Origin: Zootoca vivipara
Lineage: Eukaryota
Direction: 5' to 3'
Assembly (NCBI RefSeq): GCF_963506605.1
Contig: NC_083280.1
Location: 34,100,001 to 34,164,000 of the forward strand
Length of the DNA: 64,000 nt
Part shown: positions 9,938-63,782 of the stretch, one piece after another
How the letters are laid out: every line of letters starts with the position of its first letter
Position numbering within the stretch: the stretch's first letter is position 1
Notes under the pieces: model-generated
Told to the model about the DNA's origin: nothing
The model's input: the letters and a program-made list of their open reading frames with translations, nothing else
Databases searched by the model: none
Made by a program: the position numbers and the translations under genes

Positions 9938-9939
9938 AT
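9938..9939 (+). CDS. VAMP exon 1 coding part (AT of the split start codon)
   Basis: aaacaAT|GTGAGT, a perfect donor in a CpG-enriched region; exon 2 starts with G, completing ATG as in VAMP1/2/3. Confidence 0.8.
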
Positions 9940-10049
9940 GTGAGTATCGCCTATTTGGTTTTGCCTTTAAAAGGTTCGCCCTACCAGCGCCGATGGGTTT
10001 ACTATGGGGGCTCCCGAACGGAACGCGGGTGATGTCGAAGCGGTGTTCG

Positions 10050-10077
10050 GGCGCTGTCCGGCAGCTGTGGTGCTGAA
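10050..10077 (-). promoter_or_regulatory. Non-canonical (9-bp spacer) RE1/NRSE, REST binding site
   Basis: GGCGCTGTCC-ggcagctgt-GGTGCTGAA: both RE1 half-sites perfect and in the correct order. Confidence 0.7.
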
Positions 10078-13000
10078 AAACTCCGACTACTCAGCTTGAG
10101 CTATGGGCGTGTTCCTTCCTATACAACTACAGGAGGGCTACAAGGCTTCGAGGGGTCGAGATTCTTTTGCGGGGACACTCCAAGCCCCAGATAGGCTTCT
10201 GCTTTCAGTAGAAAGTGGGGGAACTTAGACCTCGGAAGGGTTTCTATTTAGGAAAGCCCACACAGTCCCCTGAAAGTTCATGCCTGCTTAGGAACCATGA
10301 AAAGTTGCTATTTGAGCTTTTGTGCGATGGCTTTTTGTTCTGTATTTTGTTCTGAATTGCAGAAGGGGATTACCGTGGAACAGAAAACCTCCATTTGTGC
10401 TTTATGGGGTATAGCTGAGTGGTGAATGAGGCTGTAATAGAAACTCCACTAAAGTAAAGGAGGAGCTCACCCTTGATTTAGCATTGGACCTATAGGCACT
10501 TAAAGGTAGTAATAACTGGCAGTTCAGTAGGTAATATACTTTTCTGAGATTACATTACAAGATATATGTTGGTAAAGAGAGGGCTGGAAATACTCAGTAT
10601 TCTGATTAAGACACATCTCCAATACATATTTCAGCTTGATGTAGAGCAAAATAGTGATCTGATGCCTTTGTTTTAGCAATGGGTGGGCCAAGTAGTCCAC
10701 ACTGAGGTGTGCGAAAATTTCTTACCTGCCTCCTTGTGGGCTGAAAGCTTTAAGCTAGCAGTAGGAAGGAGCAATCAGATGACCATCTTGCTTTGCCGCT
10801 GACTATAATTTACCCAGAACCTTCCTCTCTAGGGAGAGCTGCAATGAAGTGGTCTAACACATACTTTACCTGTACAATAGCTTGGCTTCATCCTGGTCTC
10901 TGGCATATTCAACAAAGAACTTCAGTGAACCCTGGCAAACAAAAACAAAGAAAACTGCAACCATGCAGGGCAGGCAGTACTAGACAGACAGACTATTAGC
11001 CCGACTTGATATAGGTCCTTTCTTTATATTATATTATTTATTATATTTACACACTGCTTTTCAGTCAAGATTGTCTCCCAAAGCAGCTTATAATTAAAAG
11101 CCACACTGTAATATAATTAAGGGTACCAAGGCTGGGGGCAGTAGCTTTGGGCTCCTGGCAGAGGGTGATACACTTTATGTTCCAGGCTTTTTCACCAGAG
11201 AGAAAGGACAAAAAGACATAGGTGGTGGTGGCTGATATTGAAGATGCCAGTTCACAAGCAGTCTGTCTGCTGACCTGCAGAGTCTTCAGACCATGGGAGT
11301 TGGTGTGTTTCTCACAAGGAGGAGGAGGGAAAGGAATTGCAGATGGACTCAGGGACTTAATATATTTTGTGTTTCTATATCCACTGGCCTCCTGTGAATC
11401 GACCTAAAAGTGGGTGGAGCCACAAGTGTGACTTTTACCTTTGTGCAGTAGGCTAGTTTCTATACATGCTCACATTCCCTCTCCATCCAGGCAAGCAAGA
11501 AGAATTACTAGAGTTCAAGGTACATTCCAGCCATGCAGAGTCACTCAAGCAGGACAGCTGGGCTGGGAAGAGTCCCAAGGACTACATTGTAAGGTCTGGA
11601 GGATGGCATTCAATCCACAAGCCTGAGATTACCCATCCCTGCCCTAGATGGTCATTTGTGCTGAATAATGTGCTCACACTTCTGCTAAGACACAGAGTAG
11701 GATACTCATTACTATTACAGAAACAAGACTTTATGATCTGCTCAGGTCTCTAAATTTTCAATAGCTTGCAGAGTTGTGTTTCTAACATTCTTATCTAAGC
11801 AATGTTACAGCAGGGATGTGAAGCCTGTGGCCTTCCAGGTGTTAAGTTCCACCTCCTATCAGAACATCCTCTATTTAATATGTATTGAAATGTTTTGGAA
11901 AGATAGGCACCCATGGCAGAGCACTTTTCTGAATGATGACAGTTGTTAAATCTATTTTCTGGTTTTCACATATTTCATTCATATTATTGACATCAATATT
12001 TATAGGCAGATATAAACTGGAATGAAATTATTAAGGCCAGTGAATCTGTGCAAAGCTAGCCCATATGGACACAGTTGTGTTGATTGCTCCAGAACATGGG
12101 CAACATGCCACTCAGTTGCACTTATCAAACCACTACAAAAAAATATGAAAGGATGAGAAGCCAGTTTGGCACTGTAAATATGAGATACATTACCAGTTAG
12201 GCACATTCTGAAGCTATGGGATAAATATGAGCTGGTTTTTCTCTAGGTCTGGCTCACTTGAAAATAGAATGTGGCTGCACGATGCCAGCTTTTTATTCCC
12301 AGATACCTCCAGGCTCCAGAGATTCATCTGGTGCCAAGCCAAGGCAAGCATAGCCTTCCCATGGAAACATAGATCAGTGCTTGGAGCCAAGCAGATACAA
12401 GAGAACCCATTCATCACTGGGTGTGCCCACCAGGCAAGGAGCAAGCAAAGGCTCTGGAACATTTGCAAGGTCTCCCGTGCAGGGGTTGGCAACCCTGCCC
12501 TGATTTCAAAGGTCCTCAGAAAATGAGCAGGTCAAGCATATGACAGCACTGACCTGTGCTCTTCCAGCAGTCCATTGACTGATGGGGAAGGGTGATTGAG
12601 ATAGACAGGAGGAGTGTCGGAGGGAGGGAGGGAAAATGTTTTCTGCACTGGTTCTGCCCACCTCTGCCTTCTGCCCAGCCTCCACTGGGATGTGGCTCCT
12701 AACAGATTATATGAAGAAAATGAAGTCCGTCCCCCCACCCTGCTCTGTTGCAGAGTGAATTGGATAGGGAACACCTTACCCAAGACAAGCCACCAGACTG
12801 TACTTGTCCCCTGTTCTTACATGAATAGCAGCTACCCCCAGGTAAGCTGCTCCCAGAAGCTATAGCCCTGTTAGATTTACTTTAGAACCAAGATGGGGAA
12901 CATTTTTAATTCTGAGGGCCACACGAAACCTTCCAGGCAGCCTTCCAAGGGCCACTTGCCAATTGTGGGTGGGACCAGAGATAACTGAGCAAACCAAAAA

Positions 13001-16000: not shown

Positions 16001-17261
16001 GCCCATCTAGTTCAGCATCCTGTTCTGACTGTGGCCAACCAGGTGTCCTGGGGAAAACCTGCAAAGTGTACCTGAGCACAAGATCATTCTCCCCTTCTGT
16101 GGTTTCCAGCAACTGGTATTCAGAAGCATTACTGCCGCTGACAGCAATCTTTGGCCTCCAGAAGTTCCTAGCCTGTGTTTTTTCTTTCTTCTTCTTCCTT
16201 TCCTACGGTAGTATTTTTGTGTCCTCTCCTCTCTCTTTTCACCTCCAGATATGCACCGTATGTTAAGATTTGTTAGACTTGGGGAAACAGGCATAGAAAT
16301 AGAATTCCTCCTGTGTGTTTTCACACATCCTTAATTGGCAGTGTTTACTAAAAGTATGCCAAGTTTAGGGATTGGGTATGGCTGGGAGTGAGAAGCAAGT
16401 ATCTGGTTTTATTGGTACTTTCCTGGGATTGTGGTTGGTCAATGGTTAATGGTGTGAATAATCATTTTTAAGGAAGAAAAATCAGCAAGTACGTATCACA
16501 GATGAAAACGTTTTTACGTGCAAAATGTGTGATAACCCTTGGTGTAAATATATTCACTGCTTGTACCAACACTTTTGCTTCACAGGGACAGGAAGTCTTC
16601 GTATCACACAGTTTTTGATGGCTGCATGTGCATAAAGATATAGTTATAACAAGCTACTGCATGCTTCCTTGTTGCTGTTTTAAATGGCATCTGAATGCTT
16701 TTTCTCCGAACAATTTGCACTTGATTATTCTTAGCTTCCGTGCATGCCCTGGAGAATAAATCTAGAAGTCGTTGATGCAAAAAGTAATTTTGTCAAGTAC
16801 ATATTGAAAACTGCCCACATTTTCAACCCCTCGAAAACCCACCCTTTAAATTTTGTTCCACTCACCTTTATTAGGAAAAAACCTTGGATGGTAACGGTGG
16901 TGTAGAAATTTAATAAATAAATAGGGTTTACATAGCTTGACTAGACTGTGTGCTCTATGGGCATATTGACACCATATATTTAAAGCACTCATATCACTTT
17001 AACAGTCATGGAAAGTCCTGGGACTTTTCTTTTTTTCAGCTGGAACTCACTAGAACTCAGTTCTGGCACCTCTCAAATGGCCTTTGTAAGAGAGAACAAG
17101 GGAGGTACTCATGGTGAGTTCTGGCCAGTGATTTGTGGCGACCTGTACCAATCAGGATGCAAGAGTCAGAGGCAAGGGAAGCTTCAGAGCTGGAGGGTGG
17201 AGCACAGGATGCGCTGGAAGAAGAGGAGGAGGTGGTGGGTCAGGCAAGTGAAGGGCTAGGT

Positions 17262-18184
17262 CAGGGGTCTGCAACCTGCGGCTCCGGAGCCGCATGTGGC
17301 TCTTTTACACCTTTGCTGCGGCTCTGGAGCGGATACGAGGGGAGGAGGCGCCCGAGCCATGCGCCGCCGGAGCCATGCGGCGGCGCCCGCCACGCCCGCC
17401 AGACACTCGCGCGGTGCCCACCGCCGCCAGAGCACACTGCTGCGGCGGCGTGCTGTGCGCCTGCGCCCCACATGGCGCCCGCCGGAGTCCACAACTCCGC
17501 TGTGCGCGTGCGCTGTGCAAAAAGGACGCAAGGTGACGTTAGCAGCCCGGGGAGCGTGGTCGGCCCCCTCCCTGCATCAGCCCCTCCCTGCCGCATTTCT
17601 GCAGCCAATAGGCTCACGGGGGGCGGGGGCGGAGTTATTTATTTTTTTAAACGGGCGCGCTTCTTTCCGCCCAGCAGCAGAAAAGGCTTGCGGGCTTGGA
17701 TCGCGTGTTTGCTGCTGCTGCTCCTGCCTGCGGCCTGCCTGTGGCCTCCTGCCGGCCTGGTCAGGAGATTGAGGTAGATGTATTAATCAATGGGTTGATT
17801 CAATATGAGGAAATTTTTATAAGTTCACTTGATGGGAGCAACACACATGAAACCATACAGGTGTCCTAATAAGGGAGTCAGAGTTTTGCCCATTCCCAGT
17901 AATCAAGGCAGCCCAAACTCAGTTATTTTTATAATGACAAGGATGACATTGGGCACTCATTATTAATTATTATTTACATCAGGCACTGATTAGGATTTAT
18001 GGTACACTGGGGCCCTGAATAATTTTCTATGGCATTTTGGGGCATTTATTATTGGGCATAGCAAATTTTGCTATGGGGCCCTCTGATTTCTAATTATGTC
18101 CCTGTTTTGCGGCTCCCAGTTTATTTTTTTTCTTCGGAAACGGGTCCAAGTGGCTCTTTTTGTCTTAAAGGTTGCAGACCCCTG
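17262..18184 (+). mobile_element. Non-autonomous hAT DNA transposon (923 bp) carrying a CpG island
   Basis: 16-bp TIR CAGGGGTCTGCAACCT at both ends; perfect 8-bp TSD GGCTAGGT (17254-17261, 18185-18192). Confidence 0.92.
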
Positions 18185-25544: not shown

Positions 25545-25668
25545 GTCAGCAGCAGCTCCTTCCCAAGGTGCAGGAGGAGCCCCCAGTCCAGGTGCAGCAG
25601 GGCCTCCGCTCCAGACCAACGTGACCAGCAATCGTAGGCTGCAGCAGACACAGGCTCAAGTGAATGAG
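25545..25668 (+). CDS. VAMP exon 2 (Pro/Ala/Gly-rich N-terminus, SNRRLQQTQAQVNE)
   Basis: tttAG acceptor, GAG|GTGAGC donor, 124 nt, synaptobrevin signature. Confidence 0.95.
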
Positions 25669-26215
25669 GTGAGCTGAGCACAAGGCACCTTGCGTTGTCT
25701 TTGTTGAGATCTGTGGATTTCAGGATTGTGATCTGGATCATCTGTTGAGTTTCAGTGTTGAATATGCCACTCACCTAGGGTGCACAGTCATTGTCCCGAG
25801 GTGAAAACTCATGTAACAAATTAGGATTGCACTGGGAATCTATGTGTCACAGCCAGCTGAGTAGCTCTTGTGTCTCAGGTTCTGTGCATCGTCTTTTTTG
25901 TCTCTCTTCTGCCTTAAAAGCTCTTGTATGTTTAAGGCAGAAGCTGAAGACGGAACGGGGCATAGCTGGGGTAGCTTTGGACAACACAGACAGCTTCAAG
26001 AAAGCGACAGGCACACAAACGCTCACTCCTTCATGCATCGACAGACACAAGAAGCAGAGTCAAACACTGTCTATCATCAATGCACAGGACACAGCTAACA
26101 TCACTGGGAGTTTGTGGGAAGAAATCCACTAAAGCAGGGGTGGGGAACCTTTATCGCATGAAGCAAATCTGGCCCAACAGGCGACCTCCCCATTTGGCCC
26201 ACTTGGGGTGGGCAA

Positions 26216-26532
26216 TGAAGTGTAGGTGGGTTCCCACAAGGCAAGACACAGTGATAACAGCACAAACCTTTATTGACTACAGAACTGGGTAATGGGGCAA
26301 AGCAACTGCTTATATACATTTCTGAAAGCCTGGGCCACTCCCACTCTCAACGTGATTGGCTGTCTAAACTTCCAAGCTGCAAATTACAACTCGGAGTTCA
26401 AGGGCCAATGGCAGAGGCCCAAATCCTGAAATGTTCTGTGATTGGACACCATGTATCGAATCAGAACACAGGAGCTCAGAATCCTTAGTCCAGACTCAAG
26501 CTCAGGCAACACAGGCTACTGAATACATAACA
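26216..26532 (-). mobile_element. Solo LTR
   Basis: TG...CA ends, 5-bp TSD GGCAA; CCAAT, TATA and AATAAA in order on the minus strand. Confidence 0.7.
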
Positions 26533-26837
26533 GGCAACCCACCGTTTTGCACTACTGTTGTTATTATGCCTGAGCTCAGAGCTCAGCCTGCCACTGCCAC
26601 CCACCAGCCTCTGCAAATCTGCTGCTTGCTTTTCCCCCCATGCCTGCTTGAGTCACCACTTCTGTCTCAGTACTCTGCCCTTGCATCTGCCTTCACACAT
26701 ACAAATGAATGAGCCAGTCGGCCAGCCAGCCAGCCATCAGGCCAGTGCTTGTGCTTATCGACAACCTTCTCTTCTCCTGCCACCTTCTTGCCACCATCAA
26801 AGACCAAGGAGAGAGGTGAGAGCCAATATGCATTTCA

Positions 26838-26838
<1 letters not shown>

Positions 26839-26878
<40 letters not shown>
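26839..26878. repeat. (AC)n microsatellite
   Basis: Direct read. Confidence 0.95.
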
Positions 26879-26881
<3 letters not shown>

Positions 26882-27308
26882 AACAGCAAACACCAGATTC
26901 CACCAGCTGCCTCCTGTCCCAGAACAAACCTGTAGCCAAGCCAGTTGTGTCCCCTCCCCCTCTACTTCCAAGTCAGTTGACAGTATTGAGTGGCAGTGTG
27001 AGGGGAGCAGCAGTAACAGAAAAATCTGTGCTCAGTTCTCTACAAAATACTGGCATTGGTATTGGGGAAATGCAATATTCCCACAAAAGAATCATTTCCA
27101 TTGGGGATTGCATTGGGATCTTACAGAACAAGCACGTAACAGTTCTTGTCCATTTGCTGTAATTTGGAGAAGTGGGGGGGGGGGTCCATCTGAAAAGATC
27201 CTTAGATAATGTCCATTAAAGTGTGATGCCATATTAAACATATCCTCAAGGTGGCACTAAACATCCACACCATAAAAATCAATTACAATTTTGTGTTTCT
27301 ATGTGTGC

Positions 27309-27309
<1 letters not shown>

Positions 27310-27355
<46 letters not shown>
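27310..27355. repeat. (TG)n microsatellite
   Basis: Direct read. Confidence 0.95.
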
Positions 27356-27356
<1 letters not shown>

Positions 27357-28427
27357 CCTGCTAGTCTGTTGCAATATCTTGTAGCAAAAGCAACTAAAAG
27401 TCCCCCTCTGCACATACCGCAATGACAGCAATATGGTTGAGCAACGTCATAACAATATTGATTGACTGTACCATGACATCATGGGGTTGATCATCATGAT
27501 CATGTTATCTGGTGATTCCGTTCTGGCTAGAACCATGTAGCAAACAGTAATTTGCTACATTTAAGAACGTTTGATTTCTCACTGGAAAGATGTCAAGCTG
27601 TTGAATCAGTTTGGTATTATTTGCAGCTTGCATTCACTGGAGTACTTCATTAAGGAAACCTTTCAGTCTTGAGTGTTTCCACTTTCTTCACCATTAGCTA
27701 AAATTAACTAGTTGAAATTAGAATGGTATTCATTTAACATAGCTACTCTTTTCTCTTTCTAAATGGAAATAAACAGCCCTAGCCTTTCCCTCAGAAAAAA
27801 GTATCACTAAGGGGCTTATTTCCTGGCGAGTGCAATTAGAAATGGAGCCGAAGACATTTACTTGAATAAATTTTTCGTTGGTTTTATATAAAGTTATACA
27901 CGATAACTATAACCATTCCAAATCATAAAAATAACAAGGTTCTTTTGAACCTTCAGACCTCCTCCCCCCTCCCCATGGGTTCCATTTCTAAATGTTTCTT
28001 TCTTTCCTTTTTTCTGCATCGTTTACCATTATCCATGTATTATATAATCATAGTAACCAAAATTCATATCACATTGCAAGTGTCATTGTATCCCTGCCAA
28101 TGATTTTAACTGTCTACAGTGGCCTTTTAAGTATACAATAAAGTTATTCCAGTCTTTTTTTTAAAAAAAAACCTTGCTCTTCCTGGCTTCTGATCTTTCC
28201 CATTAGTCTTGCCATTTCTGCATATTCCATCACAGCCTAAGACATTCAACCATCAATCCCCACCTTGTATTTGGCTAATTCAGTTGTTGCTCTTTCCTGC
28301 AGAGAGCAAATAGACAGAGGGGTTATTGGGACGGGCAGTAGGACATCACTGCTTTCCCCAGCCCCATACCCAGACATCTGCCCATGAATTTGCCCATTGT
28401 CTGAACATGCTTAGTTTCACCTTTTGG

Positions 28428-28876
28428 CATAGCTGCCAAGTACCCCATTTTCCCCAGGAAACCCCCGTTTTAACTTACCTTTTCCCGGTGGTCCCCCATA
28501 TCACTTTGTCTCCCTTTTTTCTCCATTATTATCTTCTGCCAGCGGCCATTTTTTTTCTTTCCGGTTTGCCCTTCTATGGGCACCAAAAATGGCCGCCACC
28601 GGCTTCAAAAGTCGCATCTACGCATGTCCGGAAGTGCATAGACGCAACTTTCGGTGTCGGCAGTGGCCATTTTTGGTGCCCATAGATGGGCGGAGCGACA
28701 CCGGAAGTTGCGTCGATGCACTTCCTGACATGCAAGCAAGCGACTTTCGAAGCTGACGGCGGCCATTTTTTGTGCCCATAGAAGGGCAAAGCGACACCGG
28801 AAGTTACGTCGACGCAACTTCCGGTGTCACACGGCTGCCGGCCCCGGATTCTGCAGTCCGGGACTTGGAAGGTAAG
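28428..28876. mobile_element. hAT-type non-autonomous element sharing its TIR with the 90-bp MITEs
   Basis: CATAGCTGCCAAGT start; perfect 8-bp TSD CCTTTTGG; internal direct and inverted GCGGCCATTTT / CCGGAAGT repeats. Confidence 0.85.
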
Positions 28877-29031
28877 CCTTTTGGACATTGCATAAGTGTG
28901 AAAATGCAGTGGGAGGAGGGGCAAGGATGAAGAGCATAGCTCTCTGTTTCTCTGCATGGAGGGGAAAGACCTGACTAGGCCTATAGGTCACCACCCCAGT
29001 GATTTACAAGCTATTGATATGCCCATTTCAG

Positions 29032-29190
29032 GTGGTGGATATAATGCGAGTCAATGTGGACAAAGTACTAGAAAGAGACCAGAAGCTTTCGGAGTTGGAT
29101 AACCGGGCAGATGCCTTGCAAGCTGGTGCCTCCCAGTTTGAAACTAGCGCAGCTAAACTGAAGAGGAAAAACTGGTGGAAAAACTGCAAG
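29032..29190 (+). CDS. VAMP exon 3 (R-SNARE motif)
   Basis: 159 nt, [57 protein letters not shown] boundaries. Confidence 0.98.
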
Positions 29191-29312
29191 GTAAACGTTA
29201 CTACTGCAAGGGTGTAATCAGGACATAGTTCCAAAATAATGAGTGCAAAGATTAAACCAGGGGTGGCCAAACATTCAGCCTGCAGCAGCAGCAGCAGCTG
29301 TGTTTTCATTGT

Positions 29313-29562
29313 GCCAGTGTGGTGTAGTGGTTAAGAGCGGTAGGCTCGTAATCTGGTGAGCCAGGTTCGCTTCCCTGCTCCTCTACATGCAGCTGCTGGG
29401 TAACCTTGGGCTAGTCACACTTCTTTGAAGTCTCTCAGCCCCACTCACCTCACAGAGTGTTTGTTGTGGGGGAGGAAGGGAAAAGAGAATGTTAGCCGCT
29501 TTGAGACTCCTTCGGGTAGTGCTAAAGCGGGATATCAAATCCAAATTCTTCTTCTTCTTCTT
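29313..29562 (+). mobile_element. Young tRNA/CORE-type SINE with (CTT)n tail
   Basis: GTGGTGTAGTGGTTAAGAGC head, CORE-like body; sister copy at 36388. Confidence 0.8.
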
Positions 29563-30012
29563 CATTTGAACCCCAAGTTCCACCAACAAAAGTCAGGTGC
29601 AAAATAGGTAGAGATGGGAGGTCGTACACTTCAAATTAAGGAAGAGAGCACCTTTTCAGTACCAGAACTGTACCAGAACTGAGTTCAGTACATTCAGTTC
29701 AAACCTCACGTCTGCATTTCTGCCTTTAGCCAGTCTGATTTTGGTGGGAGACGAGCCTAATTGTTTTAGCTATTGTTAAATGACTGGGAGTCAGAAACCA
29801 CATGGCAATCTGTTGCAAGTTGCTCAGACATCTTACAAGTAGATTATGATCTACTTTTCTTACATCACATGTTTGTTGCCTGGAAAAGCTGAAGTATTAG
29901 CTGTAGAAGAAGGCAAACAGCCTGTCCAAATGTACATTCAAAGCTAACCTTTCTCTGTTTTCCTCCCCTGAACTGATTCTCCCTCTCCCTCCCTCCCTCT
30001 CTCTCTATCTAG

Positions 30013-30064
30013 ATGATGATCATTCTGGGTATCGTATGTGCAGTCATTCTCATCATAATTATAA
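30013..30064 (+). CDS. VAMP exon 4 (transmembrane segment MMIILGIVCAVILIIII)
   Basis: Long pyrimidine tract plus AG, donor A|GTGAGT, 52 nt. Confidence 0.95.
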
Positions 30065-31956: not shown

Positions 31957-31973
31957 TCTATTTCTGCAGCTGA
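31957..31973 (+). CDS. VAMP exon 5 coding part (IYFCS-stop)
   Basis: ttcttttcttccAG acceptor; phase 1 gives I-Y-F-C-S-TGA, resembling VAMP1 IYFFT and VAMP2 VYFST. Confidence 0.9.
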
Positions 31974-32102
31974 ACCACTCGTGGCAAATGGCTTGTTTCC
32001 TGATAATCTCTCAAATGAAGCCTGCTTTTTAATTCCTTGTGTCTTGGGGCTCTTAGCCTGCAACAGTATGTAAGAATTCAGTGATTCAGTGTAGTCTGAT
32101 TT

Positions 32103-32230
32103 NNNNNNNNNNNNNNNNNNNNNNNNNNNNNNNNNNNNNNNNNNNNNNNNNNNNNNNNNNNNNNNNNNNNNNNNNNNNNNNNNNNNNNNNNNNNNNNNNN
32201 NNNNNNNNNNNNNNNNNNNNNNNNNNNNNN
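32103..32230. other. Assembly gap (N run) in the VAMP 3' UTR
   Basis: 128 Ns. Confidence 1.
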
Positions 32231-42960: not shown

Positions 42961-45539
42961 ACCACGTCTGTATTTCAAAATCTTGGCAAGAATATGAAAG
43001 ACATTTAGTTAAATTTAGTAAAATTTTCTGCTGAACACAGCACTCTGCTAGACAGAGTGATTTTTCCTTTGCTAACCTCTGATTCAGTTCCTACAAGACA
43101 TTTAGAAACACAGGAGGACCACCCTACTTACAGTACATAGCCCAGTAAGTGCTAACTCTTTCATCACAAATGACAGGCTCATTCCACTACAAAATCTGAC
43201 CTAGAACTAAGAGGAAATGTCAGTGTAAACTAATGGGATTTGGAAGAGGAGCCTTACAGTTTTCATCCTCTTAAGTGTTCAAAATGCTCTTCTCTGAACA
43301 AGTGTGGAATTAACCTAGAAGGGTGGTGACAGTGAAGCAGTAAGATTAAGGTAAGTTGTGCAGTGCTTGTATGTCAGAAAGACGGACTTTTATGATACAA
43401 GTGCATGTGTACCCACGCCCATGGAAAATGAAATACATAAATGCTTTTAACCAAATGTACCTCATTTAGGATTTGGAAAGTTACTGGATGTATGAAATCC
43501 CTTTAAGATCTTTTCCTATCCTTACTGAAATTCGTCTGACTTCCTGCATATTTCTTCATAACGTTTGCTATGAATCACCTGCATTAGCTTTAAATTTTAC
43601 TTTGGACAAAATTTTGGTGCCAACACTTTTTAATGACATTCCTAGCAATTCCTTGACATAAATGTTGGCAATAACAATTGCTAGAACTATATTGTGGTAT
43701 TTTCTTTGGAATGTTACACTTTACCTGCATCTGCTGGTGTTGTCGCAGCTTTTAAGAGAGAAATCAGGAGCACAGAACTTCTTTTTGAAAAACGGAAGGG
43801 ATCCTACATGGCAAGGAAACAACAGTAGTGCAAATGGGCATTGCACCTGTCTGATTTCTCCAGCATAGCTAAACATCAGCACACAGCCATGTAGTCACAG
43901 GTGTGATGTGCAAGACAAAGCCAATGCATAATTATTTCTTTAAATGTTCTTGGGCAATGAACATCAAAAATCACCACTAAATGAGACAGGATAAAAGTAT
44001 TATCAGTACATAGCAATAGATATATTGCCTTCAACGAAGTGTTATATTGCTGATATCAGAGTAAACATTTTACCTCTTTTAAAAGGCACAGAAAGTATGT
44101 GTAAAGAGGTCAGGCAATTTTTCTGACCTCCTGAGAATCAATGGAGAATCAATTCCACAGCTGGAGACAAAAAATGTGAAAGAAACAGAAGGCAGGCAGG
44201 TTTTAAAAACAAACAACAAGCACCAATTCCACAAATATCTGGGTTACTTTAAAATTTGCTGTTCAGGAACCCTGAATATATTTCATAATATGAAATAATG
44301 TAATCGGGTATCTTCTGCATTTTTTATATATAAAAAAGGAAATGTGGCATTGGTGATGTGTCAAGTGGGCAAGGCAGATTTGGGCTGTCCATTCCTGGTA
44401 TCCTCTACCTATTCTCTCTTTTGTAATTGGATTTCATGGATACTGTCGTTGACTAAGGAATTTTATCTCTGTGTTGTTTACATAGGAGCATCCTCCTGTG
44501 GGACCAGAAACCTGTTTTATTATTGATCACTGAAAGCTGCCTTATCAACCTTGTTTTGGTTAAAGAGCACCAGCAACTTACTGCTATAGAGGGTATGAAC
44601 TGTGACTTTGCTTCAAATCACTCCATTGGTTGCTTTAAAAGCAGATTTTTCAAACATTGTACGTATTGGGATGTCCAAACTTATCTGCGGAAAAGTCTGT
44701 ATGACTAGAGACACACTGGGTAGCATTTACATGGGGTGTTGGGGCACTGATATGGCTAGTTGGGCTTCACTGTTACTCCACAGGAACTGGATTTTAGGAA
44801 GCCTGGTGATGATGGGCAATAGTCTTTCAAGGATGTCTGTCCACTAACTCTGGTATTGTTACTGTGCAATCCCCAACACGCTTTGAAATACTCTGAGGCA
44901 CAACAAAATACATGTAGAAACCAACATACTATAATCTTTTCTACATCCTGATGTTGAAAAAATTGTAAGACAGATGACGTGAAAGGTAACAGGCTCATCT
45001 GAGCCCATTCTTTAAAACCAGTTAGGTGCAACTTCATTACCAAACCAATGTACTTGACGCCAGAAATAATGAATGGCTCTGCAGGGTTAGCAACTTGTGT
45101 GATGCAATAACTACATTTGTAATTACTAGTTTTACGTCATCATCCCTCCTCTGCCTTAATTAAGTTTGCTTTACCCTCGATCTGGCCCTTTGCACAGAGG
45201 TGGAGAGCACTTGCTCCTGGAGGATTTCCTTATTGAAATTGTTAACATCAAAAGCAGCTCATTTAATTGATGTAAAAGTGTGTGAAGGCATCAGCTAATC
45301 TAAAAGGCAGAAAGAACATAAGGGGTATAAATTAATATATAATAATAACATACCACGCTACGGTGCTTTTTAATGTTTAAAGCAGTGGCGTCATGGGGGC
45401 TATTTAAATCGGGGCCACCCCACTGCTTATCAAAGGAACACCATCTGCCCTGTTTTCCTCGCACAGAAAGAAGGCAGACACTCAGGTCCAGCCCAAGCTG
45501 CCCTTTCATGACACCCCAGATTTGCTGCCTCCTTGGGGT

Positions 45540-47230
45540 AGCTTCTCCTGCGGGCCCAACAACGGGGCTGGCCCTGCAGAAGCCTTCCCACCCCGCTAAC
45601 CCTCCAGACACGCGCGAGAAACGTCCTCCTAAGCCAAGGGCGCCGGCAATTCAGGACGCCGGCCGGCCGTCCCCTTCCCCGGGCTCCTCCGGGAAGCCGG
45701 CCCTTCCTTGGGCGAAGATTGAAGCGAGCAGAAGAAGGCGAGCAGCCGCTGCACCGAGAAACAACGTCGCTCCATCCGCCGCCGCTTCTACTAGCCCACT
45801 TGTCGAGGAAACATGGAGTCACACGTGAGGCTTATGCAACTCGAGTGGCGTCCGCCGCGGCCAATGGAGGCTCCCCGAGCGGCGGCGCGGCCCACCCGCT
45901 ATGCAGATGTGGCTTCGCGTCAGCCAATCCTCGCCCGCCCGAGCGGGCCCCCTCAGACACGGTCACGTTTCTGACAGTATGAAGCCCGGAGTTTGCCGGG
46001 CTGTGAGGGGGAAGCGGAGGCGGGGGCAGCTTCCCGGGGAAGGAGGCGGCGCCGAGTGAGCTGTTGAGGGGAGAAACGAGGGAAGCAGCAGAGCGGAGGG
46101 GGTGGGCGAAGGAAGGACTGCCGACCGCTCCCGTTCCTCTCCCTCCTCGCCCCGTTTACGCCCCCGTGGAGCCCCTTCGAGGCAGGCAGCGTCACTCGTT
46201 GTATAACCGGCGGCTGCCGCCAGCCGGGTCAGCCGCTCCTCGCGCCCGTCACCACCGCCGGGGCTGGAGCGGGGGCTGCGGGAGCCTCGGTCAGGGTAAG
46301 CAAGCGATGCTGGTGGTGTTTGGGGGGTCTGGCCTTTTCCCGCCCGTCACACCCCCTTCCTGCGGGAGGGAAGGGGGCGGGGGGCAGCGCCGGTGGAGCC
46401 AAGGCTGCTTTTGTGCGCGGGAGAAAATGCTTGGGTTGGTTTGGTTTCAGGGGCGGGGAGGGTGTCTCTTGCCTATCTATCGGTGGGATGGAGGGACTTA
46501 ACTAATAGGAACCTGGAGGCGGAGGAGGTTCCCACGTTTCCTCTTATTCTGAGGCGTTTCGTTGTGTGGTGATGGTGGAGGTTGTCTTTCTTTTCTCTTT
46601 TTAAATGGGATTCAAGGAAACGAGGTGCTTGGGCATTAAATGCGGCGGTCTGAAGTAGCAGATAATGTAGCTGCGGTGCTTTTGCGACCTTCGGTGAAGG
46701 CGTGTGGGTGGGTGTGTGGCGGCGGTCGAAGGACACGTGGGGATCGGGGTGCAGCGGCGGAAGTTTTTAAGAAGTGGCCTCGCGCGTCCCTGGGTTGTGT
46801 AAGTGTGCTACTAAATAATAAGGCTGCACTGCTCCTGAAACGCACGCACCGGAGCGAGCCCCTCAGGTGCCAACTTGAATAAAATATTGGGGAGGGGTGA
46901 GCCCCGCCCCGCATAATCGATCACGTGACGTGGTGCGCGAACAATGTTTGAATGGCTATACCCATCAAGTTGGGGAGGGGGCGGTCCCGTCAAATTTTTA
47001 TGGGTGGAGAGTGCGAAGGCCCCTCGGAGTTGGTTCCTATAGGGGGTTGTAAGTGACTGACACTGCCGGATCGCCTTAGGCCACTGCTGGGTCACTGGGC
47101 TGCTTTCCGTGTGTCAGTTGTGGCCAAACTCTGCATAGCCTCCGTTGAAGGCAGTACTACACGCTTTGTACGTTGTTGGGGGCGGGAGGAGGGAAGAGGC
47201 GAGCTGTCAGGTAAGCTGCGCAGGGGTTGC
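45540..47230 (+). promoter_or_regulatory. PER2 CpG-island promoter with E-box, D-box-like, CCAAT and E'-box elements
   Basis: CACGTG 45822-45827, CTTATGCAAC 45831-45840, CCAAT 45861 and 45924, GGTCACGTTT 45961-45970, further E-boxes at 46533, 46734 and 46922. Confidence 0.85.
45990..46295 (+). other. PER2: PER2 non-coding exon 1 (start approximate)
   Basis: Just downstream of the E'-box; donor AGG|GTAAGC at 46295/46296. Confidence 0.55.
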
Positions 47231-50016: not shown

Positions 50017-51372
50017 TTTGTTGTTGTTGTTTAGTCGTTTAGTCGTGTCCGACTCTTCGTGACCCCATGGACCATAGCACGCCAGGCACTCCTGTCCTGC
50101 ACTGCCTCCCACAGTTTGGTCAAACTCATGTTCGTAGCCTCGAGAACACTGTCCAACCATCTTGTCCTCTGTCGTCCCCTTCTCCTAGTGCCCTCAATCT
50201 TTCCCAACATCAGGGTCTTTTCCAGGGAGTCTTCTCTTCTCATGAGGTGGCCAAAGTATTGGAGCCTCAGCTTCACGATCTGTCCTTCCAGGGAGCACTC
50301 AGGGCTGATTTCCTTAAGAATTGATAGGTTTGATCTTCTTGCAGTCCATGGGACTCTCAAGAGTCTCCTCCAGCACCATAATTCAAAAGCATCAATTCTT
50401 CGGCGATCAGCCTTCTTGATGGTCCAGCTCTCACTTCCATACATCACTACTGGGAAAACCATAGGTTTAACTATACGGACCTTTGTAGGCAAGGTGATGT
50501 CTCTGCTTTTTAAGATGCTGTCTAGGTTTGTCATTGCTTTCCTCCCAAGAAGCAGGCGTCTTTTAATTTCGTGACTGCTGTCACCATCTGCAGTGATCAA
50601 GGAGCCCAAGAAAGTAAAATCTCTCACTGCCTCCATTTCTTCCCCTTCTATTTGCCAGGAGGTGATGGGACCAGTGGCCATGATCTTGGTTTTTTTGATG
50701 TTGAGCTTCAGACCATATTTTGCACTCTCCTCTTTCACCCTCATTAAAAGGTTCTTTAATTCCTCCTCGCTTTCTGCCATCAAGGTTGTGTCATCTGCAT
50801 ATCTGAGGTTGTTGATATTTCTTCCGGCAATCTTAATTCCGGTTTGGGATTCATCTAGTCCAGCCTTTCGCATGATGAATTCTGCATATAAGTTAAATAA
50901 GCAGGGAGACAATATACAACCTTGTCGTACTCCTTTCCCAATTTTGAACCAATCAGTTGTTCCATATCCAGTTCTAACTGTAGCTTCTTGTCCCACATAG
51001 AGATTTCTCAGGAGACAGATGAGGTGATCAGGCACTCCCATTTCTTTAAGAACTTGCCATAGTTTGCTGTGGTCGACACAGTCAAAGGCTTTTGCATAGT
51101 CAATGAAGCAGAAGTAGATGTTTTTCTGGAACTCTCTAGCTTTCTCCATAATCCAGCACATGTTTGCTATTTGGTCTCTGGTTCCTCTGCCCTTTCGAAA
51201 TCCAGCTTGCACTTCTGGGAGTTCTCGGTCCACATACTGCCTAAGCCTGCCTTGTAGAATTTTAAGCATAACCTTGCTAGCGTGTGAAATGAGCGCAATT
51301 GTGCGGTAGTTGGAGCATTCTTTGGCACTGCCCTTCTTTGGAATTGGGATGTAGACCGATCTTCTCCAATCC
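50017..51372 (-). mobile_element. Bov-B (RTE) LINE, 5'-truncated, RT frame uninterrupted
   Basis: 412-aa ORF with QAGFR, FIDY, GVRQGCILSP and YADD; (CAA)n tail; TSD TCTTAGGTAT. Confidence 0.97.
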
Positions 51373-51951: not shown

Positions 51952-52625
51952 CAGTGGTGCCTCACACAACGAAAAACTCGCTAGACGAAAGAGTTTTGCG
52001 TTGCGCGAGGCATTTGTAAGACAACAAAATTTTCTATGACCGCCGCTTCGTCTTACGAAGCGCGGCCATAGAAAGTGACAAAGGAAGATCAGCTCTCAGC
52101 GCGGGAAGCTGACAGCTGATCTTCCTTTGCCAGGGGGGACGGAGCCGAAATGCGGCGGTGCGGCGGCTGCCCCTGCCTGTCTTCCCCTTGGCTCCGGGAA
52201 GACAGGTGGGGGCAAGCAGCGCCCGCCGCGATTCGGCTCTGTCCCCCAGAGCCACAGCACCGCTGCGCACAGCCGGGGAAGACAGGCGGGAGGCGGCGGG
52301 GGAGAGAAGCGCTAAGCGCTTCTCCCCCCCCCCCCATCGCCTCGCTGCGTACCGGCGGCATGAGACGGCGCTTCGGAGACCTTCTCAGATCAGATCTGCA
52401 CTGTGGTGGTCGGGGTGGGGGGAAAGCGGAGTCCACTTCCCCCCCCCACCCTGACCGACACAGCGTCCCCCGGAGCCGAAGTGCGGCGCTGCGGCCGGGG
52501 GCTTTTCGTCGTTTGCCTTCCCCGAGCCAAGGGGGAGGCAGACAGTGAAAAGCCGCAGCGCCGCACTTCGGCTCTGGCACTGGCTTGGCGGCGGTGGGGG
52601 AAAGGCGCAGGGTCGTTCATGACCT
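51952..52625. mobile_element. GC-rich Tc1/mariner-type non-autonomous element (right end not found)
   Basis: TA-CAGTGGTGCCTC left TIR; internal GGAGCCGAA(A/G)TGCGGCG repeats. Confidence 0.6.
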
Positions 52626-56693: not shown

Positions 56694-57878
56694 GTTGTTG
56701 TTTAGTCGTTTAGTCGTGTCCGACTCTTCGTGACCCCATGGACCATAGCAGGCCAGGCACTCCTGTCTTGCACTGCCTCCCGCAGTTTGGTCAAACTCAT
56801 GTTCGTAGCTTCGAGAACACTGCCAACCATCTCGTCCTCTGTCGTCCCCTTCTCCTAGTGCCCTCCATCTTTCCCAACATCAAGGTCTTTTCCAAGGATT
56901 CTTCTCTTCTCATGAGGTGGCCAAAGTATTGGAGCCTCAGCTTCACGATCTGTCCTTCCAGTGAGCACTCAGGGCTGATTTCCTTAAGAATGGATAGGTT
57001 TGATCTTCTTGCAGTCCATGGGACTCTCAAGAGTCTCCTCCAGCACCATAATTCAAAAGCATCAATTCTTCGGCGATCAGCCTTCTTTATGGTCCAGCTC
57101 TCACTTCCATACATCACTACTGGGAAAACCATAGCTTTAACTATACGGACCTTTGTAGGCAAGGTGATGTCTCTGCTTTTTAAGATGCTGTCTAGGTTTG
57201 TCATTGCTTTTCTCCCAAGAAGCAGGCGTCTTTTAATTTCATGACTGCTGTCACCATATGCAGTGATCAAGGAGCCCAAGAAAGTTAAATCTCTCACTGC
57301 CTCCATTTCTTCCCCTTCTATTTGCCAGGAGGTGATGGGACCAGTGGCCATGATCTTGGTTTTTTTGATGTTGAGCTTCAGACCATATTTTGCGCTCTCC
57401 TCTTTCACCCTCATTAAAAGGTTCTTTAATTCCTCCTCACTTTCTGCCATCAAGGTTGTGTCATCTGCATATCTGAGGTTGTTGATATTTCTTCCGACAA
57501 TCTTAATTCCGGCTTGGGGTTCATCTAGTCCAGCCTTTCGCATGATGAATTCTGCATATAAGTTAAATAAGCAGGGAGACAATATACAACCTTGTCATAC
57601 TCCTTTCCCAATTTTGAACCAATCGGCTGTTCCATATCCAGTTCTAACTGTAGCTTCTTGTCCCACATAGAGATTTCTCAGGAGACAGATGAGGTGATCA
57701 GGCACTCCCATTTCTTTAAGAACTTGCCATAGTTTGTTGTGGTCGACACAGTCAAAGGCTTTTGCATAGTCAATGAAGCAGAAGTAGACGTTTTTCTGGA
57801 ACTCTCTAGCTTTCTCCATAATCCAGCGCATGTTTGCTATTTGGTGTCTGGTTCCTCTGCCCTTTCGAAATCCAGCTT
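56694..57878 (-). mobile_element. Bov-B (RTE) LINE, 5'-truncated, with a stop and a frameshift
   Basis: Highly similar to the 50017 copy; TSD GCAGGCGTT; inserted into the tail of an older CR1-like fragment (about 56420-56690). Confidence 0.96.
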
Positions 57879-58838: not shown

Positions 58839-59062
58839 ATGAGTGAATATTTGGAAATGGCAAATGCAGAAAACATGGATATTCAGATGAAGAATGAACA
58901 GAATTTGGATGCCCTTCAGGAAGATATTGAAATGAATGGTGGATCCAGTGCAAATGATGCAAGTGAAAATTACTCCAGTGGGCATGATTCACATAGCAAT
59001 GAGGGTGAAGAAAATGGGAAAGAGGCAACTATGATTATGGAATCTTTAGACTGTTATAAAAG
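58839..59062 (+). CDS. PER2: PER2 first coding exon (MSEYLEMANA...ESLDCYK)
   Basis: ATG at 58839 with A at -3; aligns to PER2 LQEDVDMSSGSSG...NCSTGRDSQG...GKE; donor AAG|GTAATG, phase 2. Confidence 0.88.
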
Positions 59063-59788: not shown

Positions 59789-60331
59789 TGTCCTCTTGGG
59801 TTACAAGGCACCAAAATAACTTTTAAGCTCTCTACCTTGCTTCTCAGGCAAGGCCTGTTTGATGTGCTGGCTCTGGGACCAGCAGAGATGCTGTCATGAG
59901 ATCTCACAGGATGTCAGACAGACCTGTGAAATCCCATGAGGGCATCCCTACTACGTTAAGAATAAGGCTTCTACTACGAGAATTGTGTTGCACTAGCAGC
60001 TGCTGCATTTAGATCTCACCCACTGAAATAAAAGAGACCTACATTAGTCTTGTCCATTAATTTCATTGGGTCTGCTCTCAAGTAATCTCTTTTATATTAA
60101 ATAACAGTAAATTAAGAATGATCATACCACACATTTTTTAGATCCTTATATGAACAAACAGTCCATATAAGGAAGAAATAATTATAAATCTCAGTTGTCT
60201 TAAGAGCAATGTATACCCAGTCTACATGCAATTAATCATTTTGCTCTTTTAATTAATAAACATTAAGAACTTGGGCTTTGCAGAATACAAACTACATTTA
60301 AACCAGAATTGTTTTTGTTCAGGTTGTCTAG

Positions 60332-60486
60332 CAGCGAACTATCATCTAAATCTAAAACCCAGAAGGAAGTAATAAAAACATTGCAGGAATTAAAAAGGCA
60401 TCTTCCTCCTGATAAAAGGATCAAAGGCAAACCTAGTATCCTGGCAACTCTGAAGTATGCGCTTGGAAGCATTAAGCAAGTTAGAG
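60332..60486 (+). CDS. PER2: PER2 exon (SELSSKSKTQKEVIKTLQELK...LKYALGSIKQVR)
   Basis: 155 nt, phase 2 to 1, AG/GT; alternative in-frame acceptor at 60323. Confidence 0.92.
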
Positions 60487-61059: not shown

Positions 61060-61181
61060 CCAATGAAGAATATTACCAGTTGTTGATGACTAATGAAAGC
61101 TATCCTTGTGGCCTTGATGTATTGTCCTATACTGTGGAAGATGTTGAAAACATTACCACAGAATACATCATGAAGAATGCA
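61060..61181 (+). CDS. PER2: PER2 exon (ANEEYYQLLM...YIMKNA)
   Basis: 122 nt, ctcctgtAG / GTGAGT. Confidence 0.95.
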
Positions 61182-62145: not shown

Positions 62146-62347
62146 GATATGTTTGCTGTAGCTGTTTCTTTGGCTACTGGGAAAATTCTGTACATCTCCG
62201 ATCAGGCTGCCTTTATTCTCCGCTGTAAGAAAGATGTATTTAAAAATGCCAAATTTGTGGAGTTTCTGGCACCTCAGGATGTCAGTGTGTTCTACAGCTC
62301 TACTACTCCATACCGATTGCCATCCTGGACTATTTGCAATGGAGTTG
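62146..62347 (+). CDS. PER2: PER2 exon, PAS-A (DMFAVAVSLATGKILYISDQAA...WTICNGV)
   Basis: 202 nt, AG / GTAAGT. Confidence 0.96.
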
Positions 62348-62984: not shown

Positions 62985-63307
62985 TATATTAGTTTTTAAG
63001 GTCCCGGAAGAATTTTTGTTGGTTTTGTGCATACTTCCATTCAGTTCTTTGGCAAAACAAAACTTTACTTTTGATATTATTCCAGTCCCTTCACTGGAAC
63101 ATCATACAGTTGGTGTGAATATACTCTGTCCAGCTTTTAAAACTGTATTGTTCAGAATAGAACAACAACCTTCATGTCGTTACTTCCCAGTCTTCTGATG
63201 CCCTGAGAGATAGTGAGAGACAGCAACTTTGAACAGGGAGGAGCTTCCAATTTTTAAAATACGGATTTTCTCTTATAGCTTTGAAAACCTATTTTAACAA
63301 TTACATC

Positions 63308-63517
63308 TAGTAGTCATACCTCAGGTTACAGATGCTTCAGGTTGTGCGTTTTTGGGTTGCGTACCACGGCGAACCCAGACGTACCGGAATGGGTTACTTC
63401 CGGGTTTCGGCACTCACGCATGCGCAGAAACACTAAATCACGCTTTATGCCGAAGTGTGCGTACGCAGACATGGCGCTGCGGACATGCCTCCCACACGGA
63501 TCATGTTCGCAACCCGA
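63308..63517. mobile_element. Tc1/mariner-type MITE remnant
   Basis: Degenerate AGTCATACCTCAGGTTAC start; CpG-rich body. Confidence 0.5.
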
Positions 63518-63730
63518 TATTAGATAAATTAGTTTGGTGCAAACACAATGTAGAGTTCTCTTAACTGCACTAAAATAACAAGAATAAAGGCACCTTTTTC
63601 TGCCAGTTACTGTGTTTGAATTGTTTTCAGCTGTGTAATTGCAGAGGACATCTTTCTGACTTTCAGAGTATACACTTCATTCTGTTACTGTAGATTATAA
63701 AGTCATTTTCATACTTTTATATTTTTATAG

Positions 63731-63782
63731 AGTCTACCACCCAGGAGTGCATGGAGGAAAAGTCTTTTTTTTGCCGCATCAG
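63731..63782 (+). CDS. PER2: PER2 exon (ESTTQECMEEKSFFCRIS)
   Basis: 52 nt, tttttatAG / GTGAGG; not in the ORF track. Confidence 0.93.

What the first reader, a model, noticed from the sequence alone, without database searches (positions are those of the whole stretch)
9938..63782. Synaptobrevin directly upstream of PER2: candidate additional VAMP1/2/3 ohnolog lost in mammals
Seen: an intact 117-aa synaptobrevin lies on the same strand about 14 kb upstream of the promoter of an unambiguous PER2. Established: human VAMP2-PER1 (17p13) and VAMP3-PER3 (1p36) are tandem pairs in this same orientation, while human PER2 has no VAMP neighbour and VAMP1 has no PER neighbour. The protein is a mosaic: long Pro/Ala/Gly N-terminus and MMIILG...IYF tail like VAMP1/2, WWKNCK like VAMP1/3. 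Inference: this is the whole-genome-duplication copy that travelled with PER2, a distinct neuronal v-SNARE that automated pipelines would likely mislabel as VAMP1/2/3-like.
Basis: partly seen in the sequence, partly recalled or inferred. Interest (0 to 1): 0.85.

Follow-up and report, generated by a model that had tools for sequence, protein, structure and literature searches.

The report
Fourth synaptobrevin gene beside PER2
This lizard has an intact synaptobrevin gene just upstream of the clock gene PER2; the same gene exists under wrong names in birds, turtles, frogs and monotremes, is separate from VAMP1, VAMP2 and VAMP3, and was not found in marsupials or placentals.

Summary
Four canonical coding exons (25545-31973, + strand) plus a probable split-ATG first exon ending at 9939 encode a 117-aa synaptobrevin. 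It is identical to the database protein "VAMP2-like [Zootoca vivipara]". It ends 14 kb before a PER2-type promoter, and PER2 coding exons follow on the same strand. The N gap lies 130 nt after the stop codon, so no reading frame is touched. However, the VAMP-PER2 adjacency rests on that scaffold join.

About 110 retrieved proteins share this gene's signature (ELDNRAD, WWKNCK, MMIILG...IYF[CS]T). They come from squamates, turtles, birds, frogs and monotremes, and are named VAMP1-, 2- or 3-like almost at random. The same or related species also carry separate true VAMP2 and VAMP1. Trees exclude the gene from the VAMP2, VAMP1 and VAMP3 clades and place it beside VAMP2. AU tests disfavour an origin inside tetrapod VAMP1 or VAMP2. 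Shark, chimaera and sturgeon proteins group with it only weakly, so a whole-genome-duplication age is likely but not proven.

"Lost in mammals" should read "not found in therians". RNA reads gave no coverage.

The parts
9938..9939 (+). Last two bases (AT) of the putative first exon of the VAMP gene. They are the first two bases of a start codon split AT|G. The 5' limit of the exon is unknown.
   Evidence: Exon 2 begins in codon phase 2 with G and has no in-frame ATG. P0004 starts M-S-A-A-A. This is the best of five AT|GTRAG sites upstream. Inferred, with no read support.
25545..25668 (+). VAMP exon 2: the Pro/Ala/Gly-rich N-terminus and the start of the SNARE motif (SAAAPSQ...RRLQQTQAQVNE).
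   Evidence: Acceptor tttag|G, donor GTGAGC.
29032..29190 (+). VAMP exon 3: SNARE core, 53 aa, with the zero-layer Arg, [17 protein letters not shown].
   Evidence: Pfam PF00957 at 68.4 bits. 50/53 identical to VAMP2 in PDB 1sfc/3hd7; the differences are D>N, Y>N and L>C.
30013..30064 (+). VAMP exon 4: transmembrane helix MMIILGIVCAVILIIII plus one base.
   Evidence: Donor GTGAGT. Read-through of this donor gives the ...IIIISE isoforms seen in databases (P0003).
31957..31973 (+). VAMP exon 5, coding part: (I)YFCS and stop TGA. The 3'UTR runs on towards the gap.
   Evidence: 19/20 pyrimidines before the acceptor.
32103..32230 (.). Assembly gap (128 N) between the VAMP stop codon and PER2.
   Evidence: Not in any coding exon. 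Continuity untested.
45501..47000 (+). CpG island with a PER2-type promoter: CCAAT, then an E'-box GGTCACGTTT at 45964, with CACGTG E-boxes at 45822, 46734 and 46922.
   Evidence: The likeness to the mammalian Per2 E2 enhancer rests on my own knowledge.
58839..59062 (+). PER2 first coding exon (MSEYLEMANAEN...).
60323..60486 (+). PER2 exon with the bHLH-like domain.
   Evidence: Pfam PF23170 at 6e-23. Boundaries.
61060..61181 (+). PER2 exon (ANEEYYQLLM...IMKNA).
62146..62347 (+). PER2 exon, start of PAS-A.
   Evidence: Pfam PF21353 at 2.3e-32. PDB best match is mouse PER2 3gdi at 3.7e-28.
63731..63782 (+). PER2 exon (STTQECMEEKSFFCRI).
   Evidence: The donor at 63783 matches the end of the finding.

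Best explanation
The gene is a working fourth member of the VAMP1/2/3 (synaptobrevin/cellubrevin) group of R-SNAREs, here called VAMP-X. It has the family's five-exon layout, an almost unchanged SNARE motif and a C-terminal membrane anchor. It should therefore pair with syntaxin and SNAP-25-type partners to drive exocytosis, as VAMP2 does; this is inferred from sequence and was not tested. It sits in tandem, on the same strand, directly upstream of PER2. This mirrors VAMP2-PER1 and VAMP3-PER3. Orthologues are kept in squamates, turtles, birds, amphibians and monotremes, and were not found in therian mammals. The most likely origin is the copy of an ancestral VAMP-PER pair that stayed with PER2 after the early vertebrate genome duplications, with VAMP2 as its closest paralogue. 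VAMP1 would then be the copy whose PER partner was lost.
For: Intact gene:
- The exons equal the database model P0004.
- They match Pfam Synaptobrevin and are 50/53 identical to VAMP2 in solved SNARE complexes.

Distribution:
- 112 of 430 retrieved proteins carry ELDNRAD plus WWKNCK.
- They come from squamates, turtles, birds, frogs and monotremes. Salamander and caecilian forms keep ELDD.

Separate paralogues in the same or related species:
- Zootoca VAMP2 is P0199.
- In Heteronotia, VAMP2 lies on a 68-Mb record and X on a 150-Mb record.
- In Mauremys mutica the records are 16.6 and 106 Mb.
- Taeniopygia has P0171 (VAMP2) and P0091 (X).
- In Caloenas, VAMP1 lies on a 216-Mb record and X on a 29.8-Mb record. 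The gecko Euleptes has a VAMP1.

Trees:
- V2 98/96*, V1 94/91 and V3 99/97* all exclude X.
- V2 + X + shark + sturgeon form one clade at 95/84* (the first data set, agrees).

AU tests:
- X with tetrapod VAMP1 gives p 0.016.
- X with tetrapod VAMP2 gives p 0.072 and 0.024.

Older lineages:
- Chondrichthyan proteins (P0256, P0372-P0381) and sturgeon P0292 share NCK, the MMIILG membrane anchor and the IIYFCT end. They fall with X in the best tree.
- Callorhinchus also has its own VAMP2 and VAMP1.

Literature:
- Vamp2-Per1-Hes7 are contiguous and PER2 is adjacent to HES6.
- Mouse Per2's nearest genes are Ilkap, Hes6 and Traf3ip1, with no VAMP among them.
Against: - The adjacency is seen in one window only and spans an unbridged 128-N scaffold gap.
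- The X + shark + sturgeon clade has support of only 51/0. Sharks grouping with VAMP3 is not rejected (p 0.49 and 0.40), and I found no shark VAMP3 to exclude that.
- The alignment has only 116-118 columns, most of them invariant. The sturgeon and caecilian rows are long branches.
- One of the two AU tests against a VAMP2 origin is above 0.05.
- No X-type protein was seen in gar, teleosts, coelacanth or lungfish.
- No reads covered exons 3-5 in three RNA runs of the species, so expression is not shown here.
Confidence: 0.65

Rival explanations
1. VAMP-X arose by a segmental duplication of VAMP2 in the tetrapod stem, later than the early vertebrate genome duplications. The copy landed, or was kept, upstream of PER2. 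The shark and sturgeon look-alikes would then be other paralogues.
For: X is closest to VAMP2 in the trees (95/84* for V2+X+S+A). One AU test does not reject X + tetrapod VAMP2 (p 0.072). No X-type protein was seen in gar, teleosts, coelacanth or lungfish. The link of sharks to X is weak (51/0).
Against: The constrained tree is 31-33 log-likelihood units worse, and p is 0.024 in the second data set. The VAMP2 clade, which includes chimaera, sturgeon and gar, excludes X at 98/96*. A chance landing in the same place and orientation as in the two other PER loci is unlikely; this last point is inference.
Confidence: 0.15
2. The tandem is an assembly artefact. The contig with the VAMP gene was wrongly joined, or wrongly oriented, to the PER2 contig at the 128-N gap.
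For: The gap at 32103-32230 lies exactly between the two genes. Nothing here bridges it. No read ran over the right end of the laid stretch.
Against: No poly(A) signal lies between the stop codon and the gap, so the transcript has to continue to the right. Bird orthologues lie on records of 25-32 Mb. That fits the size class of the avian chromosome that I recall carries PER2, which is weak evidence from my own knowledge. The arrangement copies the known VAMP2-PER1 order. Even if the join were wrong, the gene would still be a distinct paralogue.
Confidence: 0.07
3. The gene is simply the sauropsid and amphibian orthologue of VAMP1 (or VAMP3), and the mammalian copy moved elsewhere.
For: Many bird entries are named 'VAMP1 protein', and some turtle entries 'VAMP3'. 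It shares WWKNCK with VAMP1 and VAMP3.
Against: X + tetrapod VAMP1 is rejected (p 0.016). True VAMP1 exists in a pigeon on another chromosome and in a gecko. Birds also have VAMP3 fragments with ELDD (P0075). The VAMP3 clade, with its MW-type membrane anchor, excludes X at 99/97*. Chickens and finches have a VAMP1 with Q78V (PMC4092145), whereas bird X keeps Q-F.
Confidence: 0.03

Closest known systems
VAMP2 (synaptobrevin-2), the neuronal v-SNARE next to PER1
   Same: Same five-exon layout. The SNARE-core exon is 50/53 identical. It has an MMIILG-type membrane anchor, a long Pro/Ala/Gly N-terminus, and a tandem position upstream of a PER gene on the same strand. It is the nearest clade in the trees.
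   Different: WWKNCK instead of WWKNLK, ELDN instead of ELDD, NVTS instead of NLTS, and an IIYF[CS]T end. It lies outside the VAMP2 clade (98/96*). The same species has a separate VAMP2 (P0199). It sits beside PER2, not PER1.
VAMP1 (synaptobrevin-1)
   Same: WWKNCK. Alternative C-terminal ends arise by skipping the last splice (...SE/SK here, SKYR in VAMP1). YFCT ends occur in chimaera and lungfish VAMP1.
   Different: It lacks QVEE, FESSA and the MMIMLG anchor. An AU test rejects a common tetrapod clade.
VAMP3 (cellubrevin), next to PER3
   Same: WWKNCK and the tandem with a PER gene.
   Different: VAMP3 has a short N-terminus and an MW-type anchor (MWAI...). Its clade is separate at 99/97*.

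Membership tests
Synaptobrevin / brevin-type R-SNARE (Pfam PF00957) | Match to the family profile above the curated cut-off | tested here: met
   68.4 bits against a cut-off of 26.4 for exon 3 alone.
Synaptobrevin / brevin-type R-SNARE (Pfam PF00957) | Arginine at the zero layer of the SNARE motif | tested here: met
   The R in [10 protein letters not shown] aligns with the R of ELDDRADALQ of VAMP2 in 1sfc and 3hd7.
Synaptobrevin / brevin-type R-SNARE (Pfam PF00957) | Single C-terminal membrane anchor straight after a basic, Trp-rich linker | tested here: met
   [10 protein letters not shown] is followed by MMIILGIVCAVILIIIIIYFCS. This is read from the sequence; no topology tool was run.
Synaptobrevin / brevin-type R-SNARE (Pfam PF00957) | Forms a fusion complex with syntaxin and SNAP-25 | not tested
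   Inferred from 94% identity to the VAMP2 core. No complex prediction or assay was run.
VAMP2 orthologue group | Falls inside the VAMP2 clade and is the only VAMP2-type gene of its genome | tested here: not met
   The VAMP2 clade at 98/96* excludes it. Zootoca has a separate VAMP2, P0199.
VAMP1 orthologue group | Groups with tetrapod VAMP1 | tested here: not met
   AU p 0.016 against. Separate VAMP1 genes exist in a gecko and a pigeon.
VAMP3 orthologue group | Groups with VAMP3 and has the MW-type anchor | tested here: not met
   The VAMP3 clade at 99/97* excludes it, and its anchor is of the MMIILG type.
Ohnologue from the early vertebrate genome duplications (paralogon of PER1/2/3) | Lies in the paralogous block, in the same order and orientation as its paralogues | tested here: met
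   VAMP then PER2 on the + strand of this window, matching Vamp2-Per1. The caveat is a scaffold gap between the two genes.
Ohnologue from the early vertebrate genome duplications (paralogon of PER1/2/3) | Orthologues in lineages that split before tetrapods (cartilaginous and ray-finned fishes) | tested here: inconclusive
   Shark, chimaera and sturgeon proteins group with X at 51/0. Sharks with VAMP3 is not rejected.
Ohnologue from the early vertebrate genome duplications (paralogon of PER1/2/3) | The same neighbourhood in other species | not testable with these tools
No vertebrate genome collection was available.

The most novel reading that the evidence does not exclude
The VAMP-PER tandem is older than the vertebrate genome duplications, and all four copies can still be traced: VAMP-X with PER2, VAMP2 with PER1, VAMP3 with PER3, and VAMP1 with a lost fourth PER. 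It has been kept for some 500 million years because the v-SNARE shares the clock gene's regulatory domain. On this reading VAMP-X would be a circadian-tuned synaptic v-SNARE that birds, reptiles, amphibians and monotremes have and therians lost. The only hint for shared regulation is that forced CLOCK/BMAL1 expression raises Vamp2 along with Per1 in mouse cells.
Probability: 0.15. Interest if true: 0.75.

Novelty: new member of a known kind. Interest (0 to 1): 0.55.

Why it matters
VAMP1, 2 and 3 are treated as the full set of synaptobrevin-type v-SNAREs and as the full set of VAMP targets of tetanus and several botulinum toxins. A fourth, strongly conserved member in chicken, zebra finch, Xenopus, lizards and platypus bears on three things. 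The first is how knock-outs, antibody signals, toxin sensitivity and transcript counts in these model animals are read. Zebra finch has two different proteins both called VAMP2, and platypus 'VAMP2' is the X type. The second is the picture of the PER paralogon, which it completes. The third is a dated gene loss on the therian stem. I found no paper that describes it in seven searches of the paper library. Orthology databases may well already separate it, so the novelty lies in recognition and naming rather than in a new kind of protein.

Tried and rejected
- Other VAMP or PER windows of this genome: the search of earlier findings returned only notes on this same window.
- Literature: seven searches found nothing on a VAMP beside PER2.
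- RNA evidence: three raw RNA-seq runs of the species and one contig set were laid on 26103-32102.
  - All depth fell on interspersed repeats (28.3-28.9 kb and 29.3-29.7 kb), at 95-99% likeness and with loose ends.
  - Depth was zero over exons 3, 4 and 5, and there were no joints.
  - Only about 6% of each run was read, the tissue is unknown, and human-like reads are filtered out.
  - This is therefore no verdict on expression.
  - The 5-8% word shares in other organisms' runs may be the repeat and not the exons.
- Rfam: no family matched anywhere in the window.
- CpG island at 17.0-18.0 kb as an alternative first exon: it has no AT|GT donor, and it reads like an inserted GC-rich element.
- Outgroup error: one row first used as an outgroup (P0361) turned out to be a caecilian VAMP1. 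The tree was rebuilt with mollusc outgroups.
- Spliced model: the joined 117-aa model was never sent to any tool. Exons were searched singly by reference, and the identical database protein P0004 was used for whole-protein work.
- Gap: it was neither filled nor looked up.
Full report
**What is in the window**

A motif scan found synaptobrevin peptides on the + strand at 25.6, 29.0 and 30.0 kb. Reading the DNA gave four coding exons:

| Exon | Coordinates | Note |
|---|---|---|
| 2 | 25545-25668 | N-terminus and start of the SNARE motif |
| 3 | 29032-29190 | SNARE core |
| 4 | 30013-30064 | membrane anchor |
| 5 | 31957-31973 | stop TGA at 31971-31973 |

Each has an AG acceptor and a GT donor.

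Exon 2 begins with the third base of a codon and has no in-frame ATG, so the start codon must be split AT|G. Mis-predicted database isoforms of VAMP2 and of this gene begin with R, W or G before the first Ser. All of these are codons ending in G, which suggests the split codon is general to the family.

Five AT|GTRAG sites lie upstream of exon 2. It remains an inference.

The exon translations tile the 117-aa database protein P0004, [quoted passage not shown], without a mismatch. They differ by one residue from the Podarcis muralis protein. The window is therefore from Zootoca vivipara or a very close relative.

I did not send a joined model to any tool. Exons went in by reference, and P0004 served as the whole protein.

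Exon 3 matches Pfam Synaptobrevin (68.4 bits, cut-off 26.4). It is 50/53 identical to VAMP2 of the solved SNARE complexes. The three changes are D>N in ELDD, Y>N before WWKN, and L>C in NLK.

**The gap**

The 128 N at 32103-32230 begin 130 nt after the stop codon, so no coding frame is affected. No poly(A) signal lies between the stop and the gap, and the first signals are at 33466 and 35352. The transcript should therefore run on to the right.

I could not test whether the two sides are truly contiguous. The single read-laying run ended at the left edge of the gap and nothing ran over it. The VAMP-PER2 adjacency therefore rests on the scaffold join.

**PER2**

Stop-free stretches on the + strand give the following exons:

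| Coordinates | Content | Evidence |
|---|---|---|
| 58839-59062 | first coding exon | |
| 60323-60486 | bHLH-like domain | Pfam bHLH_PER, 6e-23 |
| 61060-61181 | ANEEYYQLLM...IMKNA | |
| 62146-62347 | start of PAS-A | Pfam PAS-A, 2.3e-32 |
| 63731-63782 | STTQECMEEKSFFCRI | |

Among solved structures the PAS-A exon is closest to mouse PER2 (3.7e-28), then PER1 (1.4e-23), then PER3 (1.2e-13).

A CpG island at 45.5-47 kb carries CCAAT followed by GGTCACGTTT at 45964, and three CACGTG boxes. From my own knowledge this resembles the non-canonical E-box enhancer of mammalian Per2. The distance from the VAMP stop codon is 14.0 kb.

**Relatives**

Three word-indexed searches, one exhaustive search and three name look-ups gave 430 proteins.

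- **The X type.** 112 proteins share ELDNRAD with WWKNCK. They have an MMIILG-type anchor and an IIYF[CS]T end. They come from squamates, turtles, birds, frogs, platypus and echidna. A salamander (P0231) and a caecilian (P0260) have the same N-terminus and end but keep ELDD.
- **Naming.** Source names are VAMP1-like, VAMP2-like, VAMP3-like, VAMP1, VAMP2 or VAMP3 without pattern. Zebra finch has two different proteins called VAMP2 (P0091 and P0171).
- **Separate VAMP2 in species with the X type.** Zootoca has P0199. Heteronotia has VAMP2 on a 68-Mb record and X on a 150-Mb record. Mauremys mutica has them on 16.6-Mb and 106-Mb records. Taeniopygia, Patagioenas, Pelodiscus and Chrysemys also have both.
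- **Separate VAMP1.** Caloenas has VAMP1 on a 216-Mb record and X on a 29.8-Mb record. The gecko Euleptes has a VAMP1. A paper reports a chicken and finch VAMP1 with Q78V, whereas bird X keeps Q-F.
- **Therians.** No therian protein of the X type appeared, although marsupial and placental VAMP1, 2 and 3 did.

**Trees**

The first tree used 80 rows and 116 columns. It gave VAMP2 98/91*, VAMP3 100/100*, VAMP1 78/84, and 26 of 28 X rows together at 82/86. One "outgroup" row proved to be a caecilian VAMP1. I therefore rebuilt the tree with 61 rows, mollusc outgroups and the sturgeon protein:

| Grouping | Support |
|---|---|
| VAMP3 | 99/97* |
| VAMP1 | 94/91 |
| VAMP2 | 98/96* |
| VAMP2 + X + shark + sturgeon | 95/84* |
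| X + shark + sturgeon | one clade in the best tree, only 51/0 |

AU tests:

| Groups forced into one clade | p-AU |
|---|---|
| X + tetrapod VAMP1 | 0.016 |
| X + tetrapod VAMP2 | 0.072 (80 rows) |
| X + tetrapod VAMP2 | 0.024 (61 rows) |
| X + sharks | 0.476 (not rejected) |
| Sharks + VAMP3 | 0.49 and 0.40 (not rejected) |

The alignment is short and mostly invariant, so deep forks are weak. The firm result is that X lies outside the three known clades, each of which spans cartilaginous or ray-finned fishes to mammals.

**Age of the gene**

Callorhinchus has an X-like protein (P0381) beside its own VAMP2 (P0384) and VAMP1 (P0389). Sharks have the same X-like type. The Atlantic sturgeon protein P0292 also has NCK, MMIILG and IIIIYFCT. 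This fits an origin before jawed vertebrates split.

It does not prove that origin. I found no shark VAMP3, so the shark gene could be their VAMP3 with an ancestral anchor. Sturgeons also have extra genome duplications of their own.

**Comparison with what is known**

- A paper describes Vamp2, Per1, Hes7 and Aloxe3 as contiguous, and PER2 as adjacent to HES6.
- Another names Ilkap, Hes6 and Traf3ip1 as the three genes closest to mouse Per2.
- The PER genes are ascribed to the two early genome duplications.

The simplest reading is that a VAMP-PER pair was duplicated as a block, that the copy beside PER2 survives outside therians, and that VAMP1 lost its PER partner. A tetrapod-stem copy of VAMP2 that happened to land in the same place and orientation is less likely, and the AU tests lean against it.

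**How it most likely works**

It acts as a v-SNARE for exocytosis, given the near-identical SNARE core, the zero-layer Arg and the membrane anchor. This is inferred and not tested.

Tissue and timing of expression are unknown. RNA reads from three runs of the species gave no depth on exons 3-5, and only repeats were covered. With 6% of each run read, unknown tissue and a filter against human-like reads, this is no verdict.

**Verdict**

The gene is real and well conserved, and it is a distinct fourth member of the VAMP1/2/3 group.

The tandem with PER2 is seen here, with a scaffold-gap caveat.

The genome-duplication origin is likely but unproven.

"Lost in mammals" should be narrowed to therians.

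Noticed in passing
window 2904-3272, minus strand: An ORF of 122 aa matches Pfam DUF4637 (C17orf50 C-terminal zinc-binding domain) at 3.6e-14, above the cut-off. This supports another first-stage note on a hidden gene upstream of the VAMP gene.
   Followed up: partly
proteins P0329 and P0365 (Magallana gigas); Mytilus cluster of P0342: Oyster isoforms share their N-terminus and SNARE core but carry either an MMIILG-type or an MW-type membrane anchor. Mussel isoforms of one gene are named both 'synaptobrevin-like' and 'VAMP3-like'. The VAMP3-type anchor may descend from an old alternative exon, which would distort deep VAMP trees.
   Followed up: partly
window 29167-29169 (codon N in KRKNWWKN): The Tyr before WWKN, otherwise nearly invariant in VAMP1/2/3, is Asn in lacertids, in Xenopus laevis and in the sturgeon protein. 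It is His in Elgaria, Salvator, Rhineura and Bufo.
   Followed up: no
window 25660-25665 and 29098-29103: There are Asp-to-Asn changes at QVDE>QVNE (squamates and some amphibians) and at ELDD>ELDN (amniotes and frogs). The tetanus/botulinum B cleavage site Q-F is kept. Another first-stage note covers this.
   Followed up: partly
window 50035-51300 and 56706-57730: Two long copies of one interspersed repeat lie in the same orientation inside PER2 intron 1. Their stop-free translations are near-identical over more than 300 aa.
   Followed up: no
window 52001-52500: A second strong CpG island (GC 0.66, observed/expected 0.88) lies inside PER2 intron 1, about 6 kb after the promoter island. Its purpose is unknown.
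   Followed up: no
window 28300-28900 and 29300-29700: RNA reads of the species pile up here at 95-99% likeness with many loose ends. These are transcribed repeat copies from elsewhere, inside VAMP introns 2 and 3.
   Followed up: no
window 17200-17760: A GC-rich block of about 550 bp (CpG observed/expected 0.69) sits in VAMP intron 1, with GC-rich low-complexity sequence and no fitting splice donor. It is probably an inserted element.
   Followed up: partly
proteins P0003, P0005, P0007, P0014, P0035 and others: Many X-type database models end in ...IIIISE or ...IISK. This is read-through of the exon 4 donor, a variant C-terminus that parallels the SKYR form of VAMP1. Sharks have ...SKYLYWNT.
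   Followed up: no
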